A DNA stretch of 63,341 nt, the filler included, from Octopus bimaculoides (Eukaryota): the NCBI RefSeq assembly GCF_001194135.2. It is 7 parts of 7 records of this genome, joined end to end, with 100 filler letters (N's around TTAATTAATTAA, not from the genome) between each part and the next. Parts side by side here need not be neighbours in the genome. Positions count along the whole stretch, not along the records: positions 50,576 to 61,036 come from NC_068986.1; 6 more parts are not named here. One strand, given 5' to 3'. Each line of letters starts with the position of its first letter. The first letter of the stretch is position 1. Below, piece after piece: positions 50,597 to 61,136 of this stretch. A program made the translations under genes and the position numbers. Under the pieces are notes generated by a model that was not told the origin of the DNA, did not search any database, and saw only the letters and a list, made by a program, of their open reading frames with translations.

Positions 50597-50832
50597 CAGG
50601 GTGTTCAGAAAGTCTCTGCGCAGTAAGTATTTAATGGTTTTCGGGCGATTCTTGTACACTGATCCTTTACTTGCTTCCCGGCGCAAAAAAAGTCTGGCGG
50701 TGTTAAATCAGATGATCTTGGTGGCCAAAGTCTTTTCGAAATAATCCGTTCACCGAAAAACTCTTGAAGTAACGCCATGGTGATGAGCAGAATTAAAAAG
50801 ATTCACTGCGGAGAGACCTTTTGAACACCGTG
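50597..50832 (-). mobile_element. Tc1/mariner-superfamily internally deleted element (236 bp)
   Basis: TIR cagggtgttcagaaagtctctgcgcagt / actgcggagagaccttttgaacaccgtg with TA TSDs; minus-strand remnant LQEFFGERIISKRLWPPRSSDLTPPDFF. Confidence 0.88.
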
Positions 50833-51374
50833 TATAATATATATATATATATATATGTGTGTGTATATATGATATATATAATATATGTATATATGAATAT
50901 ATATATATATATAATACATAATTGTGTGATTTATATTTATGTATGTGTGTGTGAGTATGTGTGCATGTGTGTGTATATATATATATTTATGTACGCGGGC
51001 GCGCACACACACACACAGACACACACAGACACACACACACACACACACACTGATATATGTATGCACGCATACTTTCGTAGGGACATATATAGACAAACAG
51101 GCACACATCTACAAGCCTGCACCTAAGAAATCTCTGTTAAATCGTTTTCATTTATAGCACCAATTAATACTTACGAAGCCGCCGCAACCACCATTCCCGA
51201 ACATCAACACCTGTGCCAAGTAACCCCACCTCCCCTACATTATCACCACCGCCGTCACTACCACCAATGCTACGACTGCCACAACCCGTAGCACTGTCGC
51301 TGCCGCCACCCTCTCCTCACAAAAAGCAGACTCCTTAGTAAAATATTTTTAATGAGTTTGCTTCGTAATAATGC

Positions 51375-51590
51375 TTTCTATTATAGGTACAAGGCCTAAA
51401 ATTTTCGCGGAGGGGGCCAGTCGATTAGATTGACCTCAGTACGCAACTGGTACTTAATTTATCGATCCCGAAATGATAAAAGGCAAAGTCGCCCCCGGCG
51501 GAAATTGAACTCAGAACGTAAGACAGACGAAATACCACTAAGCATTTCGCCCGGCGTGATAAGGATCCTGCCAGCTCGCCGCCTGAGCCT
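51375..51590 (-). mobile_element. SINE family B
   Basis: Reverse complement of the 19639 family. Confidence 0.8.
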
Positions 51591-52301
51591 GGTTTGTAAT
51601 AATATCTTATTAATGTAAAAATTTTATGTAAAACATTTTAGAGAAAAATATTCAAATAAAAATTTATTCATACAACATTAATTTTAAAACTAAAATGGAT
51701 TTTCAGCCTATTAGTGCACATTATGAAGATTTTCGAGGTTAATAACGTTTATTGTTGAGAACAAATCGCGATTCCTGACATTAGCTGAAGTTTAGGTATC
51801 GAAAATGCTTCAAGCTTCTTGATTTGGAGTGAATGTATCGATTTTGCAGAAAGAAAGGCAAAGTCTGCCTTGACTGGATGGGAATTCAGAACGTAAAGGG
51901 ACTTAACTCAATATATTCACCCTTTTTTTTTTCTCGTTGCTTTACCGATAGGCACAGTAATTCTGAGCAGAGGGGATTAATCGAGCTGATCGACCTCGAT
52001 GTTTGTGCTTAATTTTATCGGCCCCCGAAAGGTCGAAAGGCAAAATTGACTTCAGCTAATAATAATAATAGTAATGACAACAACAACAACAACAACAATA
52101 ATAATATAATAATAGCAATAATAATAAAAATAATAATAAGGGCTCCAATAAGGTGGAGCACTTGCAGAAAACAGCACTGTTAGGAACTGCTCGAATACTC
52201 CGGATGGTGCTCGAAAAATAAGGGATGTTACCTTACTTCACTGTTAGTGAACACCTGACACCGTAGCGTTAGCTGTGCAAAGACAATAAGTAATAATAAT
52301 G

Positions 52302-52409: not shown

Positions 52410-52760
52410 TCGAATTCTGGTATGAAGCCAGCGTTTTCGTGGGAGAGAATAAGTCAATTACATCGATCCTAGTGTTCGACTGGTACTTATTTTATTGACC
52501 TCGAAAGGATGAAAGGCAAAGTCGACCGCGGCGGAATTTGAACTCAGGACGATAGGCACAAAGGCTTGAAATTTCGGGGAAGGGGACAGGCGATTACATC
52601 GACCCCAGTGCTCGACTGGTACTTGTTTCATCGACCCCACCAAAAAAAGGACGAACGGCAAAGTCGATCACGGAGGAATTTGAACTCAGAGCGTCAAGGC
52701 CGAAGAAATGCCGTTGGGCATTGTGTCCGATGCGCAAACGATTTTGCCAGCAGCTCAAAC
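52410..52760 (-). mobile_element. Two adjacent SINE family B copies after an (AAT)n tract
   Basis: Two aggcaaagtcga..cgg.ggaatttgaactcag blocks. Confidence 0.75.
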
Positions 52761-53599
52761 ATCACGGTAAGGCTGGATCGCTTCAGTGTACAGCGGCAAC
52801 TACTTAGTGGTTAGAGTAATTAACCACCTATGGGAATAGTTTCGAATCACCGCTTTGTCTGTCGAGTGTCTTGTCTCATTTTTTTCTCGATCTACTGCTT
52901 TGAAAACTAACGGCGCTGTAGGACATCCGGTTCAACTGTGATGCAACAGAGCTGTGTGGGCATATGCAGAAGACGTCACCGTAAAGGTTCAGTTGAAAGA
53001 CCGTTCTGAAATGTCCCTGTTGTTCTTTTTGTACAACGAAGTCTTCCTACATTATGAAGTTATCCCGATCTTAGTGTCCTTTAGGTATGTGACCCTGTTT
53101 GTCAGAATAGTCTTTGTTGTGTTTGTGTGAGATTTTCGGATCACCTCTTCAGTGTTTATTTTGTTGTTGTTCATGGTTTATTTGATCAAATCTTTCTGGT
53201 TCTTTCAAACGGCATTGAAGACGATGGTGGGAAATGAGTTTTGTGTGTCTGGTTGTTAGAACAACAATAATAATAACAATTTTTCCATGTAGGCATGAGG
53301 GACCCTCACGGCTGCCAACATCCACTAGAAAATAAACTGGTTCTTCACCCATTTTTGCGCCAGTCTTCAACTAATTCCTGGCACTTAGCTCTCTTCCTGT
53401 TTTGCGCTTTCCCCGTTCTCTCCTCTGAGAGCACTGATAACTCCAGTGAGTGATAAACATGGGTTGGATGCATGGTCAGTCATGAATATCAATTGGAGGG
53501 GGCAGTGGAGGAAGTATGAGTGGGTCAGGGAGGTAATAGGTGGTAGCACAGATGATGTGAAGTGTGTGGGAGTAAAGTATGAGAGAGATGTACAGTGTT

Positions 53600-54293: not shown

Positions 54294-55392
54294 AAAATAA
54301 TCGGCTACTGTTTTCAGATAAAGACAACCTCGTTGGTACAAAGCTGGTACTGATTGGCTGTGGAAGAAAAAGGGAAAAGTTGGTGAGACTTAACAAGGCC
54401 CGGCAAGGCCCAGCAAGGCCCAGCAAGACTCAGTATGACCAGAAAAATCATAAAAGTACATCAACACCAAATAAGCTTAAGCAAAGTAAAAAAGAAAAAA
54501 AGGTTCACTTAAATAAAGGAAAATCAACCCAAGACTATCAGGAACCAACAAGACCCATCAGGACCCAATCAATCAAACAAGGCTCAGTAAGGCCAAGCAA
54601 GACTCAACAAGGACCAGCAGGACCAAGAAAGGTAAAACCAGCAAAGAGCCAGGCAAAGAGAATAGAAACCAAAACAAATATCAACCGAAAGATCCGAACA
54701 CCTGAATAATATCACATTTTATTAAAAAAAAAACATTTATTTATTTATTTTTTTCATTTGATTAATATATTTAGTTATAAGGTATTTCCGTTCCCTCTTG
54801 TCTAAGCATTTCCTCCCCTCAGTAGGAAAATGTTATCAGGTAACAAATTTATAGATAAATAAATATGTAGGTGAAATGTGTAAAAAAAAAAAAAATAAAA
54901 TAAAGAAAAAAAAATAAAGAAAAAAAAGAGGAAACCAAAACAAGCGCACAAATAAAAAGCAAAAGCAAAACCAAGNNNNNNNNNNNNNNNNNNNNNNNNN
55001 NNNNNNNNNNNNNNNNNNNNNNNNNNNNNNNNNNNNNNNNNNNNNNNNNNNNNNNNNNNNNNNNNNNNNNNNNNNNNNNNNNNNNNNNNNNNNNNNNNNN
55101 NNNNNNNNNNNNNNNNNNNNNNNNNNNNNNNNNNNNNNNNNNNNNNNNNNNNNNNNNNNNNNNNNNNNNNNNNNNNNNNNNNNNNNNNNNNNNNNNNNNN
55201 NNNNNNNNNNNNNNNNNNNNNNNNNNNNNNNNNNNNNNNNNNNNNNNNNNNNNNNNNNNNNNNNNNNNNNNNNNNNNNNNNNNNNNNNNNNNNNNNNNNN
55301 NNNNNNNNNNNNNNNNNNNNNNNNNNNNNNNNNNNNNNNNNNNNNNNNNNNNNNNNNNNNNNNNNNNNNNNNNNNNNNNNNNNNNNNNNNNN

Positions 55393-55429
<37 letters not shown>

Positions 55430-57058
55430 ATTAAATATGTATGTATGTATGTATCTATCTATCTGTCTATCAGTCTATCAGTCTGTCTGTCTCATTTTGT
55501 CAGTCTTTCTCTCTGTCTGTCTATCTACTTATGTATGTTTGTGTACACACACACGTGTGTTTATGTATGTGAGTATATATATATATATATATGTGTGTGT
55601 GCGTGTGTGTGTGTGTGTGTGTGCGTGCGCGTGTATCCTTAGGCATATGCACATATGCACACATACACCAAAGCATGCATATTTACATACACAGATATCT
55701 AATTACATATCCATATGCACATGTATGCATTTGCGCATGTGTGCGTATCAGTTGGCCACGAATCAACCACCTTACCCACTCCACCTCCTCCCATTAAAAG
55801 CTAAATAATTATTCTCTTTAATGATTTATTAACTTATGTTGTTTTAAAAGAAGAATTCTCTCGTTGTTTAAGACGTTTCGTTCTACTCACCTGGCTGAAT
55901 TAAGACCACCCTTCACGTTGACATAAAATGCAACGGTTTGAGGTCGTTAAGAGCAACAGTACTTCAGAGTGAAATAAATTTAACGATGGCCCATCCTTCT
56001 GTAATTACTTTCGTTTGAAGCACGTAAAGTTGATAAATTAATGATATGTAGAAATATCTGGGCTGGACGAGGATCTTACACAACAAGTAGGAAGTTTTAG
56101 GAAACATGATTAGTTTACTTCTGAGTAAACAACTGACTAATTAAAAGGAATGGAAATGAAATTAAAATCTTTATCCAGATGTTGTTGTTTTTGAGCTCTA
56201 TATCAAAGCTGATCGAGCATGCCTATTTTATAGAGACGTTCCATTCGTGATCATCCACCATTTTGTCTTTCTTTAGGCGGGGAAATCTTGGGTTAAATTA
56301 CCTAGTATTATACGCTATTTGAAGATGACATGTTAATTTAGGGGTATTTGGTTGCTATTTCTACCAGGTTGCGCGATCACATAAAGGCTTTCCTGATGGT
56401 GGTGATGTTTTATTGTTGAAATCAATGCGATCTGGTGAATAAGTTATTCGTTAGCTTCTATGTAGATCGTGGGTTCGGATCTACCGTAGGTGCTTTGTTG
56501 ACTTTCTATATTATGCTACAGTCCTTGCGATCTTCGTGGGCCCTCCTCTCACACTGTCAAGATCAATGTAATCGATGGAGAGGGAATTCGAGAGGGTTGA
56601 AACTTTGAGAGGAATGATTGGATAATATATTTAGTTCGAGACCTGAGAGATGGGGTGCAGTAGAGCTGATAAGAGGAAGAAAGACAGATGTGTCGTGTGG
56701 GTTAAGGGTGGGAGTAAATTATGTATCGAGCTAAAGTTGTTAGTTCTATGACTAAAATCAAGGGAAAATGTTACTTGCAACAGACTGGGCTTACTCCAAA
56801 ATGTAACTGTAGAGACACAGCCACTGCCCACTTAACCCAGCATGCATGTTTAACTCAGTGGTTTACGAAACTGAGCTCTCCTCAGTTCCACACAATAACG
56901 AAACTCAAAATGAAAAAAGGTCTATGCAAAAGTTACTCTAAAAAAGATATGCAAACCACTAGGCTTCTTCCGAAACACAGATATAGCACTGAGCCTTATA
57001 GCAGAAGTCACTATAAGCCAATAAATACTTTTACATAATTCCTGTTCCTCTGTCTATT

Positions 57059-57113
<55 letters not shown>

Positions 57114-57625
57114 ATTTCGTATGCACATTTGTGCGTGTTTACATAATATAAAAATATTAATGAAAATACCTTCGCCTATACGACGATACACAGGTACGGA
57201 TATGCATATAAGCACGAACACACACATACACACACATTTATAATAATAACCATATACATATTCAAATGATCTCTTTATTACATTAATAAAAGATGCAATA
57301 CAGTTGTGCATGGGATTTGCAGAGATTTTGCACATATTTATTCAGGATTAATCCTCAGCGATCGGGACATGTTTTGAAGATAACAGACGTAATGTCACTG
57401 CAAAGAGACAGATTCTTTTACACAGACAGATAGTTCTTTAGATTGTAAGTGTAAACTAGAAAGGGGCTTACTTGGTACATTTGTTATACCCAGACAAATC
57501 CCAGAGAAGAGTCGATACATATACGTGTATTATTTACTTTGTACTACAAACAGAAAGTAACCCTGGTTTGGTATTGGCTTAGAATATGCACGCCCAATGT
57601 ATAATAGGTCTATCTATCTATCTAC

Positions 57626-58896: not shown

Positions 58897-59052
58897 TCTG
58901 TTTGCTTCTTTCAGTTTTCGCCTACCAGATCTACTTACAAAGCTTTGGCCAGCCCGAGGCTATAATAGGAGACACTTGCCCAAGGTGCCACGCAATGGGA
59001 TTGAACCCGGACCCATGTGGTTGGGAAGCAAGTTTCTAAACCACACAGCCAC
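58897..59052 (-). mobile_element. SINE family A, 5' half
   Basis: Reverse complement of the tRNA head plus ccttgggcaagtgtc core. Confidence 0.8.
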
Positions 59053-59238
59053 TTTTACGTCTTGATTCCACGCAAAAAATCCCTTTTTTGTTTTTCTAAA
59101 TGAAAATTTTCACAAAATTTGCCAAAAAATTAAGTACTAGGGTAGATTCATTCGACTAAAGTTTTTCGAGTAAAATTCATCGAGGCAGTGCCCCAGCATG
59201 GCAGCAGTCAAATGATTGAAGCAAGAAGAACGTTAAAA

Positions 59239-59877
59239 GGTACCGTTTAAGGCTGAGGGGGTGGGGGCATTAGCTCCCTTGTTCGAGGTATAAGGACGCA
59301 GTTGTACGTCGGTAGCCAACTGGAAAAGATGTTTTTCTGGGGCTAAAAAAAGGTAGTAACATCATCCTGATCATTGGGAAATAAATTTTACTCTGTATTA
59401 CTGTTACTACTTATTTCTCGATCAGAGATTTAAAACTAAATGTTTTCCTCTTTATGAGATCAGTAACTGTGTGTCACTTTAAAGTATATACCTCGAACAA
59501 GGCCTAATGCTGCCATTTGGAACCAACGGTTATCCTGTGCTGATGAAGAGAAATAACCCAGAAACCATGGTCCGCAGGTACCGTTTAAGGCTGAGTGGAG
59601 ACATTAGCTTCTTTGTTCAAGGTATAAAGACGCAGTTGTGCGTCGATAGCTAGCTGGAAAAGAGTTTTTCCTGGGGCTAAAAAAGGTAGTAACATCATCC
59701 TGATCATTGGGAAATAAATTTTACTCTGTATTACTGTTACTACTTATTTCTCGATCAGAGATTTAAAACTAAATGTTTTCCTCTTTATGAGATCAGTAAC
59801 TGTGTGTCACTTTAAAGTATATACCTCGAACAAGGCCTAATGCTGCCATTTGGAACCAACGGTTATCCTGTGCTGAT
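59239..59877 (+). repeat. Tandem ~333-338-bp monomers delimited by a hammerhead (candidate non-LTR retrozyme)
   Basis: Monomer starts ggtaccgtttaagg at 59239 and 59577; the second runs into a gap exactly within its hammerhead core (59873-59877). Confidence 0.85.
59534..59578 (+). ncRNA. Minimal type I hammerhead ribozyme
   Basis: cctgtg-CTGATGA-agagaaataaccca-GAAA-ccatgGTC-cgcagg; 6-bp stem I with one G-U pair, palindromic stem III accatggt, weak stem II; predicted cleavage after C59572. Confidence 0.82.
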
Positions 59878-60292
59878 NNNNNNNNNNNNNNNNNNNNNNN
59901 NNNNNNNNNNNNNNNNNNNNNNNNNNNNNNNNNNNNNNNNNNNNNNNNNNNNNNNNNNNNNNNNNNNNNNNNNNNNNNNNNNNNNNNNNNNNNNNNNNNN
60001 NNNNNNNNNNNNNNNNNNNNNNNNNNNNNNNNNNNNNNNNNNNNNNNNNNNNNNNNNNNNNNNNNNNNNNNNNNNNNNNNNNNNNNNNNNNNNNNNNNNN
60101 NNNNNNNNNNNNNNNNNNNNNNNNNNNNNNNNNNNNNNNNNNNNNNNNNNNNNNNNNNNNNNNNNNNNNNNNNNNNNNNNNNNNNNNNNNNNNNNNNNNN
60201 NNNNNNNNNNNNNNNNNNNNNNNNNNNNNNNNNNNNNNNNNNNNNNNNNNNNNNNNNNNNNNNNNNNNNNNNNNNNTATATATGAGAGGAAA

Positions 60293-60944
60293 TTGAAAAC
60301 GCAAATCCTAGGCAGTCAACCAAATTCCCGAACGCATAAATGAAGATATTCAATCAATGTAACTGAATCATTTATATTTATATACATCAACAAAAACCAT
60401 GCATGTTTAGGCATAAAGATTCTCTAGGGGTATACAGAATGAAACAAAACATACATAAAAATATAGGAGAGATATAAAAGCATATAAAAATATATAAAAA
60501 TACATATAAAATCACATATAAATAAGGATTACATGTAAAAAGTTATGCGTGATAAATATAGGAAGCATCATATCTAAGATGTATGAGATATTTTAGACGA
60601 TTTAGGCGGTCTGCCATTTTGAAGATTGACATTTTTACTCCTATATTTATCAACCTCTCATTCGTTCTATGCCTCCTATATTTATCACGCATAACTTTTC
60701 ACATGTAATCCTTATTTATATGTGATTTTATATGTATTTCTCTATATTTTTATATGCTTTTATATCTCTCCTATATTTTTATGTATGTTTCGTTTTATTC
60801 TTTATACCCTTGGAGAATATTCATGCCTGTACATGCATGATTTATGTTGATGTGTATAAATATATATGATTCAATTACATTGTTTGAATATCTTCATGTA
60901 TGCGTTCGGGAATTTGGTTGACTGTCTAGGATTTGCGTTTTCAA
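60293..60944. repeat. Long inverted repeat (foldback/MITE-like) with ~275-bp arms and ~100-bp spacer
   Basis: ttgaaaacgcaaatcctaggcagtcaaccaaattcccgaacgcata… mirrored by …tatgcgttcgggaatttggttgactgtctaggatttgcgttttcaa. Confidence 0.92.
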
Positions 60945-61136
60945 AATCCTCTTCTTTGTATTATTTCACATTGGCTCTCTACGAGCACTTCGTAAATAGC
61001 CCATACTTTCTATAACATACTTAATATTGTGTATATNNNNNNNNNNNNNNNNNNNNNNNNNNNNNNNNNNNNNNNNNNNNTTAATTAATTAANNNNNNNN
61101 NNNNNNNNNNNNNNNNNNNNNNNNNNNNNNNNNNNN

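What the first reader, a model, noticed from the sequence alone, without database searches (positions are those of the whole stretch)
59239..59877. Hammerhead-punctuated ~335-nt tandem repeat folding into a rod: candidate cephalopod non-LTR retrozyme / circular RNA
Seen: two head-to-tail non-coding monomers, with a complete minimal type I hammerhead (GUC site, palindromic stem III accatggt) at the monomer boundary; the array collapses into a gap at the second ribozyme. The monomer is self-complementary end to end: ttgttcgaggtata (59279-59292) pairs perfectly with tatacctcgaacaa (59487-59500), extended by gcattag/ctaatgc, gacgcagtt/aactgtgtgtc, accgtt/aacggt and ggtagtaaca/tgttactact. Known: metazoan non-LTR retrozymes are short tandem repeats with minimal type I hammerheads that yield circRNAs, and palindromic stem III favours dimeric cleavage, which needs tandem copies. 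Inference: this is such a family, probably mobilised by the PLE RTs abundant here. I know of no description from octopus.
Basis: partly seen in the sequence, partly recalled or inferred. Interest (0 to 1): 0.88.

Follow-up and report, generated by a model that had tools for sequence, protein, structure and literature searches.

The report
Hammerhead-ribozyme tandem repeat (retrozyme-like)
This is a real two-copy tandem repeat of about 335 bases carrying a hammerhead self-cleaving RNA motif at the unit junction, which fits a known class of animal mobile elements (non-LTR retrozymes), but the ribozyme in the one complete copy has a broken helix II and nothing about the wider family could be tested here.

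Summary
59238-59877 is a head-to-tail repeat (period 333-338, 1.9 copies, 94% identical) that runs into a 400-N gap.

A type I hammerhead lies across the unit junction at 59525-59585:
- The catalytic core is complete: CUGAUGA, GAA, A15.1-U16.1 and C17, with cleavage predicted between 59572 and 59573.
- Helix I has 6 + 6 bp.
- Helix III is the palindrome ACCAUGGU.
- Rfam Hammerhead_HH9 matches end to end at 28.2 bits, E 7.7e-6. This is below the gathering score of 52, and the match appeared only in a 75-nt search.
- A descriptor without helix II finds this one site, against 0.003 hits per shuffled piece.

"Complete minimal" is overstated. The geometry is canonical, and helix II (AGAG/CCCA) keeps only 2 of 4 pairs, with A·A at 10.1/11.1. 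This copy is probably crippled.

The unit is highly self-paired (61% of bases, z -4.3 linear and -3.6 circular). It is a 55-pair closing helix plus a branched centre, not a pure rod, and both strands fold about equally well.

The anatomy fits the metazoan non-LTR retrozymes already described in corals, mussels and amphibians. Copy number, covariation, target-site duplications, circular RNA and a link to Penelope-like elements could not be tested, because no cephalopod data are within reach of the tools. Verdict: a new member of a known kind, of modest interest.

The parts
59238..59575 (+). Repeat unit 1 (338 nt). It starts 3 nt downstream of the position equivalent to the hammerhead cleavage site.
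   Evidence: TRF; pairwise alignment; blastn of the unit against the piece.
59576..59877 (+). Repeat unit 2 (302 nt present), cut by the assembly gap. It is 100% identical to unit 1 over its last ~200 nt and differs only within its first ~107 nt.
59525..59585 (+). Type I hammerhead ribozyme motif spanning the junction between units 1 and 2.
   Evidence: Rfam RF02275 Hammerhead_HH9, 28.2 bits, E 7.7e-6, model positions 1-77. The descriptor scan finds this as the only hit.
59534..59539 (+). Helix I proximal 5' strand CCUGUG, pairing with CGCAGG 59573-59578. The distal part is AACGGU 59525-59530 with ACCGUU 59580-59585, and the internal loop is UAU 59531-59533 / U 59579.
   Evidence: Sequence; pair probabilities 0.91-0.99 for the proximal part and 0.55 for the distal end; aligned to HH9 helix I and loop 1.
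59540..59546 (+). Catalytic core C3-A9 (CUGAUGA).
59547..59560 (+). Helix II and loop 2 (AGAG-AAAUAA-CCCA). It has the canonical 4+6+4 size, but only G59548-C59559 and G59550-C59557 can pair. Position 10.1/11.1 is A·A and there is one A·C mismatch.
   Evidence: Non-canonical pairs are flagged in the cmscan alignment; pair probabilities below 0.01; the isolated hairpin has MFE 0.0, against -3.5 for the HH9 consensus.
59561..59572 (+). G12-A13-A14 (59561-59563), helix III palindrome ACCAUGGU (59564-59571) and C17 (59572). Predicted cleavage is after 59572.
   Evidence: Two copies form an 8-bp intermolecular helix III (-11.2 kcal/mol), and the dimer is the cofold MFE.
59858..59877 (+). 5' part of the second hammerhead (helix I 5' strand plus CUGAU), identical to the first and cut off by the gap.
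59277..59292 (+). Left arm of the perfect 16-nt inverted repeat, pairing with 59487-59502. It is the core of the 55-pair long-range helix that joins 59573/59238-59307 to 59463-59539.
   Evidence: the repeat finder I11; MFE structures.
59487..59502 (+). Right arm of the perfect 16-nt inverted repeat.
59878..60277 (.). Assembly gap of 400 N that hides the rest of the array and its 3' boundary.

Best explanation
The locus is a short array, at least a dimer, of a non-coding ~335-nt element of the non-LTR retrozyme / hammerhead satellite kind.

**Inferred life cycle of the family** (model of PMC7229834 and PMC7761336):
1. The array is transcribed as a multimer.
2. Neighbouring hammerheads pair through their palindromic helix III (ACCAUGGU) and cut after C17.
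3. This releases unit-length RNA with 5'-OH and 2',3'-cyclic phosphate ends.
4. A host tRNA-type ligase circularises the RNA.
5. The highly self-paired circle is copied by a borrowed reverse transcriptase, most likely from a Penelope-like element, and re-inserted as tandem copies.

**Shown here:** the repeat, the ribozyme core with helices I and III, the self-complementarity, the lack of coding capacity, and the array edge lying 3 nt from the cleavage position.

**Inferred:** transcription, cleavage, circularisation and mobilisation.

This particular genomic copy is probably a decayed or weakly active relic, because its helix II is disrupted.
For: - Tandem repeat of 333-338 nt.
- Full-length match to Rfam Hammerhead_HH9, including the loop-1 residues GUUA/GUAC and an A-rich 6-nt loop 2.
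- All invariant core nucleotides and GUC are present. Chance expectation is 0.003 per piece, and 0 of 3000 shuffles with a palindromic helix III.
- Helix I is strongly predicted.
- Two junction segments cofold into the dimer with an 8-bp helix III: -39.2 kcal/mol against 2 x -14.4.
- The unit fold is 61% paired, z -4.3 linear and -3.6 circular. The hammerhead core sits as the terminal loop closed by helix I.
- GC is 41%.
- The longest stop-free stretch is 56 aa, and there is no protein homologue in 5.8 billion sequences.
- The array's 5' edge at 59238 lies 3 nt from the cleavage-equivalent position. By my arithmetic the chance of falling within +/-3 nt is about 7/335 = 0.02. This is consistent with a template RNA whose 5' end was made by self-cleavage.
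- These features match the published definition: 150-450 bp repeats, type I hammerhead, no LTR/PBS/PPT, GC below 50%, self-paired circles of 170-400 nt (PMC7229834).
- A mismatch at the base of helix II has a precedent in the abundant axolotl HHR_Amex2 retrozyme family.
Against: - Helix II is essentially absent in the only complete ribozyme: A·A at 10.1/11.1, where G-C is highly conserved (PMC4209133), and pair probabilities below 0.01.
- The Rfam score is 28.2, below the gathering score of 52. Searches of 728 nt and 10 kb returned nothing.
- Only 1.9 copies are seen and there is no other copy in the 10.5-kb piece.
- No relative was found in any collection within reach.
- There are no compensatory changes. 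The 10 substitutions between units are all transitions: 3 keep a pair as a wobble, 3 break a pair, and 4 are unpaired.
- The minus strand folds about as well (z -4.7), so the self-complementarity carries no RNA-strand-specific signal.
- No reverse transcriptase was found nearby.
Confidence: 0.68

Rival explanations
1. The two units are pseudo-LTR material of a Penelope-like element (partial tandem, or 5'-truncated copies), not an independent non-autonomous element. The ORF would lie in the gap or have been lost.
For: - Penelope-like elements carry hammerheads in their pLTRs and insert as partial tandems (PMC4209133, PMC8557442).
- Vertebrate retrozymes are phylogenetically sister to pLTRs (bioRxiv 10.64898/2026.07.22.740005).
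- The array runs into a gap of unknown real size.
Against: - The two units abut directly, with no ORF between them.
- No RT or GIY-YIG signal appears in the ten open stretches scanned against Pfam, among 54 of at least 55 aa in the piece.
- Metazoan PLE hammerheads are 'min-HHRs' with a long helix II (6-8 bp), a bulged base after A9 and little or no helix III. This motif instead has canonical 6-bp helix I and 4+6+4 helix II dimensions, and aligns end to end with HH9.
Confidence: 0.14
2. An ordinary satellite or foldback repeat in which a hammerhead-like string arose by chance or is a long-dead fossil. In this reading there is no RNA-level function, and the self-complementarity is just a DNA inverted repeat.
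For: - Helix II is broken.
- The Rfam score is below the gathering score.
- Both strands fold equally well.
- The differences between units look like neutral transitions with no compensation.
- Another large foldback lies just beyond the gap.
Against: - Chance is unlikely: 0.003 hits per shuffled piece without the palindrome requirement and none with it; HH9 E 7.7e-6.
- The motif sits exactly at the unit junction.
- Helix I is continuous with the long closing helix, as in described retrozyme circles.
- A 'dead fossil' of a retrozyme is a state of the best explanation, not a different origin.
Confidence: 0.1
3. The tandem arrangement is an assembly artefact: reads of dispersed single copies were joined at a contig end next to a gap.
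For: - The array ends in a gap.
- The last ~200 nt of the two units are 100% identical, while all 14 differences fall in the first ~107 nt. By my calculation p is about 4e-7 under a uniform spread. Consensus collapse could produce this pattern.
Against: - The junction itself (59525-59585) is contiguous sequence.
- The hammerhead exists only if the end of one unit abuts the start of the next.
- The 5' thirds of the two units differ, so they are two distinct copies.
- Gene conversion within arrays explains the identity pattern equally well.
Confidence: 0.05

Closest known systems
Metazoan non-LTR retrozymes (Cervera & de la Peña 2020, PMC7229834), e.g. Mytilus galloprovincialis 350-390 bp repeats, Acropora millepora 220-240 bp, Ambystoma mexicanum
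   Same: - Short tandem unit of 333-338 bp.
- One type I hammerhead per unit at the junction.
- Weak, palindromic helix III that suits dimeric cleavage.
- No ORF, LTR, PBS or PPT.
- GC of 41%.
- Predicted highly self-paired monomer or circle, with the ribozyme at one end.
   Different: - No sequence relative was retrieved.
- Only a dimer is seen.
- Helix II is defective in this copy.
- Unlike the mussel hammerheads, which lack most loop 1/loop 2 tertiary-contact nucleotides, this one aligns with the HH9 loop residues.
- Expression, circularity, copy number and target-site duplications are untested.
Rfam RF02275 Hammerhead_HH9 and the related canonical type I hammerheads of amphibian and Schistosoma satellites
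   Same: - End-to-end alignment.
- 6-bp helix I, a GUUA.../...GUAC internal loop, CUGAUGA, a 4+6+4 helix II module with an A-rich loop, and GAAACC...GGUC.
   Different: - The score of 28.2 bits is below the gathering score of 52.
- 2 of 4 helix II pairs are non-canonical.
- Helix III is shorter: a 3-nt deletion relative to the model makes it the palindrome ACCAUGGU.
- HH9 proper is a single-copy conserved intronic ribozyme of amniotes (my own knowledge), not a tandem repeat.
min-HHRs in pseudo-LTRs of Penelope-like elements (Cervera & de la Peña 2014, PMC4209133)
   Same: - Type I topology.
- Palindromic 15.2-16.2 / loop 3, and a dimer-dependent design.
- Association with retroelement-type tandem arrangements.
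   Different: [quoted passage not shown]
- Here helix I is 6+6 bp, helix II is 4 positions long and mismatched, and no RT-EN ORF is adjacent.
Plant LTR retrozymes and viroid-like or satellite circular RNAs with hammerheads
   Same: Self-cleaving hammerhead and a highly paired small RNA; circularisation is proposed.
   Different: - Those carry type III hammerheads.
- Plant retrozymes have LTRs, a PBS and a PPT and are 600-1000 nt.
- Viroid-like RNAs have ribozymes in both polarities and are not genome-encoded.
- No minus-strand hammerhead is found here.

Membership tests
Hammerhead ribozyme, type I | Invariant core: C3-U4-G5-A6-N7-G8-A9, G12-A13-A14, A15.1-U16.1, H17 (not G) | tested here: met
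   CUGAUGA 59540-59546, GAA 59561-59563, A59564/U59571, C59572.
Hammerhead ribozyme, type I | Helix I formed by the sequences flanking the core, open-ended (type I topology) | tested here: met
   CCUGUG/CGCAGG plus AACGGU/ACCGUU; pair probabilities 0.55-0.99; aligned to HH9 helix I.
Hammerhead ribozyme, type I | Helix II with a Watson-Crick 10.1-11.1 pair (G-C highly conserved) | tested here: not met
   The pairs are A·A, G-C, A·C, G-C. Pair probabilities are below 0.01 and the isolated hairpin has MFE 0.0.
Hammerhead ribozyme, type I | Helix III; in metazoan type I a 1-2 bp stem with a small palindromic loop, extended in dimers | tested here: met
   ACCAUGGU gives 2 bp plus a CAUG loop in the monomer. 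The intermolecular 8-bp duplex is -11.2 kcal/mol and the dimer is the cofold MFE. The definition is in PMC4209133.
Hammerhead ribozyme, type I | Reaches the Rfam gathering score of a hammerhead family | tested here: not met
   RF02275 scores 28.2 bits against a gathering score of 52. No hit was returned when 728 nt or 10 kb were searched.
Hammerhead ribozyme, type I | Site-specific self-cleavage | not testable with these tools
   This needs in vitro transcription of monomer and dimer constructs.
Metazoan non-LTR retrozyme | Head-to-tail repeats of about 150-450 bp, each with a type I hammerhead | tested here: met
   Period 333-338 with 1.9 copies. One complete hammerhead, and the first 20 nt of a second at the gap edge.
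Metazoan non-LTR retrozyme | Non-coding; no LTR, PBS or PPT; GC below 50% | tested here: met
   The longest stop-free stretch is 56 aa. No protein homologues were found. GC is 0.41. The units abut directly without terminal repeats.
Metazoan non-LTR retrozyme | Unit RNA predicted to be stable and highly self-paired | tested here: met
   MFE -104.8 (z -4.3) linear and -98.0 (z -3.6) circular; 61% of bases paired.
Metazoan non-LTR retrozyme | Many dispersed or arrayed copies in the genome, with sequence families and covariation | not testable with these tools
   No animal genome collection is available. There is no second locus in the piece, and nothing in the metagenome, viral or prokaryote scans.
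Metazoan non-LTR retrozyme | Target-site duplications flanking the array (when present) | not testable with these tools
   The 3' end of the array lies in the 400-N gap.
Metazoan non-LTR retrozyme | Expressed as linear and circular RNA of unit length | not testable with these tools
   No transcriptome data are available.
Metazoan non-LTR retrozyme | Co-occurrence with autonomous Penelope-like elements in the same genome | tested here: inconclusive
   No RT or GIY-YIG match in the ten open stretches scanned, among 54 of at least 55 aa in the piece. The rest of the genome is not visible. Cephalopods are reported to carry PLEs of the Naiad clade as old remnants (PMC8557442), and that clade lacks canonical hammerheads.
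Penelope-like element pseudo-LTR | Direct repeats flanking an RT / GIY-YIG ORF | tested here: not met
   The units are adjacent with no ORF between them. No RT or EN domain was found in the available flanks. The gap leaves a residual doubt.
Penelope-like element pseudo-LTR | min-HHR architecture: long helix II, bulged nucleotide after A9, short helix I, helix III minimal or absent | tested here: not met
   The dimensions are canonical and the motif aligns to HH9 over the full model. The descriptor features are from PMC4209133.

The most novel reading that the evidence does not exclude
The family is an active, expressed circular-RNA retrozyme of cephalopods, with an intact consensus ribozyme. 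Its long double-stranded stem is a substrate for the very active cephalopod A-to-I editing system, and edited RNAs are written back into the genome by retrotransposition. This would explain why the two units differ only by transitions, 7 of 10 being A/G on the RNA strand, with the G alleles of unit 1 closing A·C mismatches in the helix. With two copies, these numbers cannot be told apart from ordinary transition bias.
Probability: 0.05. Interest if true: 0.7.

Novelty: new member of a known kind. Interest (0 to 1): 0.32.

Why it matters
If the family proves multicopy and expressed, it would add cephalopods to the animal groups that make small ribozyme-processed circular RNAs. It would also provide a mollusc example that, unlike the mussel elements, keeps the archetypal loop 1/loop 2 hammerhead design. 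That is a useful data point for how retrozymes relate to Penelope-like elements, because cephalopod Naiad-type PLEs are reported to lack canonical hammerheads. It does not open a new mechanism. As it stands, this is one partly decayed locus.

Tried and rejected
1. **Rfam on the whole piece and on 728 nt.** No hammerhead was returned. The hit appeared only in a 75-nt search, so negative Rfam results at the larger scale are weak evidence. The many mir-297, mir-466 and similar hits are CA/TG/TA microsatellites, not genes.

2. **Attempts to fetch further copies. All failed.**
   - Exact look-up of ORFs inside the repeat and in the flanks.
   - A protein search with the 56-aa junction peptide, and another with a six-frame concatenate of the unit.
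   - DNA patterns for the hammerhead and the stem in metagenome, viral and prokaryote collections.
   - A relaxed hammerhead pattern gave 14 metagenome loci. At most two or three look hammerhead-like by eye (L008, and perhaps L011 and L001). None is related to this unit. The three tested with Rfam were negative, and L008 has no tandem repeat.

3. **Covariation between the two units.** This is impossible in principle here, because the 3' partner strands are identical.

4. **Strand asymmetry of the fold as evidence for RNA-level selection.** None was found: z -4.3 on the plus strand against -4.7 on the minus strand.

5. **Bacterial-type promoter and terminator scan, and ARAGORN.** Both were uninformative for an animal locus.

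6. **Six-frame Pfam scan by DNA reference.** I replaced it with a scan of ten of the longest open stretches.

7. **A chance origin of the hammerhead.** Rejected on the shuffle test.

Full report
**1. What is in the sequence**

Tandem Repeats Finder reports one long-period array in the piece: 59238-59877, period 333, 1.9 copies, 94% matches, score 1153.

- Unit 1 is 59238-59575 (338 nt).
- Unit 2 starts at 59576 and stops at 59877, where a run of 400 N begins.
- blastn of the unit against the whole 10.5-kb piece finds only these two copies.

**2. The hammerhead**

Reading the junction by hand gives the following elements:

| Element | Sequence | Coordinates |
|---|---|---|
| Helix I, distal 5' strand | AACGGU | 59525-59530 |
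| Internal loop, 5' side | UAU | 59531-59533 |
| Helix I, proximal 5' strand | CCUGUG | 59534-59539 |
| Core C3-A9 | CUGAUGA | 59540-59546 |
| Helix II and loop 2 | AGAG-AAAUAA-CCCA | 59547-59560 |
| G12-A13-A14 | GAA | 59561-59563 |
| Helix III | ACCAUGGU | 59564-59571 |
| C17 (cleavage follows) | C | 59572 |
| Helix I, proximal 3' strand | CGCAGG | 59573-59578 |
| Internal loop, 3' side | U | 59579 |
| Helix I, distal 3' strand | ACCGUU | 59580-59585 |

Rfam results depended on how much sequence was searched:
- Nothing was returned for 10 kb or for 728 nt.
- On the 75-nt stretch 59518-59592, where the filters are laxer, Hammerhead_HH9 (RF02275) aligned over the full model (positions 1-77) at 28.2 bits, E 7.7e-6.
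- The gathering score is 52, so this is a sub-threshold match.
- Scaled to the whole piece, the E-value is about 1e-3 (my arithmetic).

The alignment shows identity in CUGAUGA, GAAACC...GGUCC, the helix I internal-loop residues (GUUA on the 5' side, GUAC on the 3' side) and the A-rich loop 2.

An independent descriptor required the core, A15.1-U16.1, H17 and a 6/6 helix I, with no demand on helix II. It finds exactly this site in the real piece, against 9 hits in 3000 dinucleotide shuffles and none when helix III must be palindromic. The motif is therefore not a chance string. It also sits exactly on the unit junction.

**3. What is wrong with the hammerhead**

Helix II has the canonical 4+6+4 layout, but its four pairs read A·A, G-C, A·C, G-C.
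- cmscan flags both mismatches.
- The two G-C pairs have probabilities of 0.003 and 0.008.
- The isolated hairpin has no stable fold, whereas the HH9 consensus folds at -3.5 kcal/mol.
- Adding helix II to the structure costs energy: -7.7 with it against -9.3 without.

G10.1-C11.1 is described as highly conserved (PMC4209133). A U·U mismatch at the base of helix II does occur in the abundant axolotl HHR_Amex2 retrozyme family (PMC7229834), so a weak helix II is not unheard of. Two mismatches in four positions, however, make this copy an unlikely efficient ribozyme.

"Minimal" is the wrong subtype as well. The Penelope-type min-HHRs have a long helix II, a short helix I and a bulged base after A9. 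This motif has canonical dimensions.

**4. Helix III and dimers**

In a monomer, ACCAUGGU gives only 2 bp plus a CAUG loop, with pair probability around 0.001. Two copies can form an 8-bp intermolecular helix of -11.2 kcal/mol. The cofold minimum of two 62-nt junction segments is exactly this dimer: -39.2 kcal/mol against 2 x -14.4.

This matches the published logic for metazoan type I hammerheads: cleavage in multimeric transcripts and protection of the monomeric circle (PMC4209133; PMC7761336).

**5. The fold of the unit**

Starting at the cleavage site, the 338-nt unit folds as follows:

| Strand and form | MFE (kcal/mol) | Shuffle mean (sd) | z |
|---|---|---|---|
| Plus, linear | -104.8 | -82.8 (5.1) | -4.3 |
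| Plus, circular | -98.0 | -78.7 (5.4) | -3.6 |
| Minus, linear | -94.3 | -69.7 (5.2) | -4.7 |

- 61% of bases are paired.
- 55 long-range pairs join 59573/59238-59307 to 59463-59539. They include a perfect 16-bp stretch, 59277-59292 with 59487-59502.
- The central ~155 nt form four or five local hairpins.
- Helix I of the ribozyme is the outer end of the long stem, so the catalytic core forms one terminal loop of the molecule.

The structure is thus a long closing helix with a branched interior, not a strict rod. Because the minus strand folds about as well, the self-complementarity alone does not show RNA-level selection.

**6. The two units compared**

All 14 differences (10 substitutions and 4 indel events) lie in the first ~107 nt. 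The remaining ~200 nt are identical. Under a uniform spread the probability is about 4e-7. This points to gene conversion, recombination between subfamilies, or consensus collapse during assembly.
- All 10 substitutions are transitions. Of these, 3 keep a pair as G·U, 3 break a pair and 4 are unpaired.
- Compensatory change cannot be assessed, because the partner strands are identical.
- Unit 2 is less stable: -95.7 against -104.8.

**7. Boundaries and surroundings**

Homology begins at 59238, which is 3 nt downstream of the position equivalent to the cleavage site. The chance of falling within +/-3 nt is about 0.02 (my arithmetic). This is what a cDNA of a self-cleaved RNA would give, allowing for a small 5' loss. 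The point is suggestive only. The 3' boundary is in the gap, so target-site duplications cannot be examined.

The flanks hold microsatellites, three further N gaps, SINE-like fragments and a large foldback. No reverse transcriptase or GIY-YIG endonuclease was found among the ten open stretches scanned, out of 54 of at least 55 aa in the piece.

**8. Mechanism proposed**

This follows the published retrozyme model (PMC7229834, PMC7761336):
1. Transcription of the array.
2. Dimer-dependent hammerhead cleavage after C59572.
3. Circularisation by a host tRNA-type ligase.
4. Reverse transcription of the circle by a borrowed RT, most likely from a Penelope-like element, which yields new tandem inserts.

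What is shown here is the anatomy only. Every step of the cycle is inferred. This copy is probably a relic with an impaired ribozyme.

**9. Comparison with what is known**

The published definition of metazoan non-LTR retrozymes is: 150-450 bp tandem units with a type I hammerhead, no LTR/PBS/PPT, GC below 50%, and self-paired circular RNAs of 170-400 nt. At locus level this definition is met.
- Mussels, also molluscs, have 350-390 bp units. Their hammerheads lack most of the loop 1/loop 2 contact nucleotides, whereas this one aligns with the HH9 loops.
- A 2026 preprint finds that most retrozyme families have at most seven units per array and are sister to PLE pLTRs.
- In cephalopods, the Naiad clade of PLEs is reported to survive only as old remnants, and Naiads lack canonical hammerheads. 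The mobilising partner is therefore open.
- No paper in the held library links hammerheads or retrozymes with cephalopods (supplement).

**10. What could not be done**

No animal genome or transcriptome is within reach. Exact-protein look-ups, two protein searches (one a six-frame concatenate of the unit) and eight DNA-pattern scans returned no relative. Copy number, covariation, expression and even the host species remain unverified.

**11. Verdict**

- The ribozyme in hand is defective.

Noticed in passing
window 59238-59877: All 14 differences between the two repeat units fall in the first ~107 nt, and the last ~200 nt are 100% identical (p about 4e-7 if spread uniformly). All 10 substitutions are transitions, 7 of them A/G on the plus strand. 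The pattern could come from gene conversion, assembly collapse, or RNA or cDNA deamination.
   Followed up: partly
window 59518-59592: The Rfam hammerhead match (28.2 bits) is visible only when 75 nt are searched. The same site gives no hit in 728-nt or 10-kb searches even at E<=10. Negative Rfam results on long stretches can therefore miss weak ribozymes.
   Followed up: yes
window 58905-59053 (- strand): A tRNA-derived SINE-like head with a B-box-like GGTTCAATCC. From memory it resembles the abundant octopus SINE. ARAGORN calls no tRNA here.
   Followed up: partly
window 59146-59237 (+ strand): The sequence directly upstream of the array (...CAGTGCCCCAGCATGGCAGCAGTCAAATGATTGAAGCAAG...AAAA) resembles, from memory, the 3' tail of the same SINE family. 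It ends in an A run just where the repeat begins.
   Followed up: no
window 60285-60568 and 60669-60952: A large inverted repeat with 284-nt arms, 92% complementary, and a 100-nt spacer, immediately after the gap. It looks like a foldback or MITE-like element and is unrelated in sequence to the hammerhead unit.
   Followed up: partly
window 50608-50802 (- strand): An open stretch reading ...GERIISKRLWPPRSSDLTPPDFF... looks, from memory, like the C-terminal part of a mariner/Tc1-type transposase. There is no Pfam hit at E<=0.1.
   Followed up: partly
window about 51400-51640, 52000-52060 and 52460-52810: Several copies of another dispersed repeat give similar conceptual peptides (for example ...DERQSRSRRNLNSERQ... 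and ...DKRQSRPRRKLNSERK...) on both strands. It is probably a further SINE or repeat family.
   Followed up: no
window 50936-51058, 55390-55750 and 57042-57243: The Rfam 'microRNA' and scaRNA hits (mir-297, mir-466, mir-5014, SCARNA7 and others, all far below gathering scores) coincide with CA/TG/TA microsatellites and are low-complexity artefacts.
   Followed up: yes
L008 675-707 (metagenome contig Ga0126339_10130952): The sequence GCCUGC-CUGAUGA-GUCUGCAGCCGGAC-GAAACCAUGGUC-GCGGGC looks like an intact hammerhead with the same helix III palindrome. There is no tandem repeat and no Rfham hit at E<=0.01 when searched in 10 kb.
   Followed up: partly
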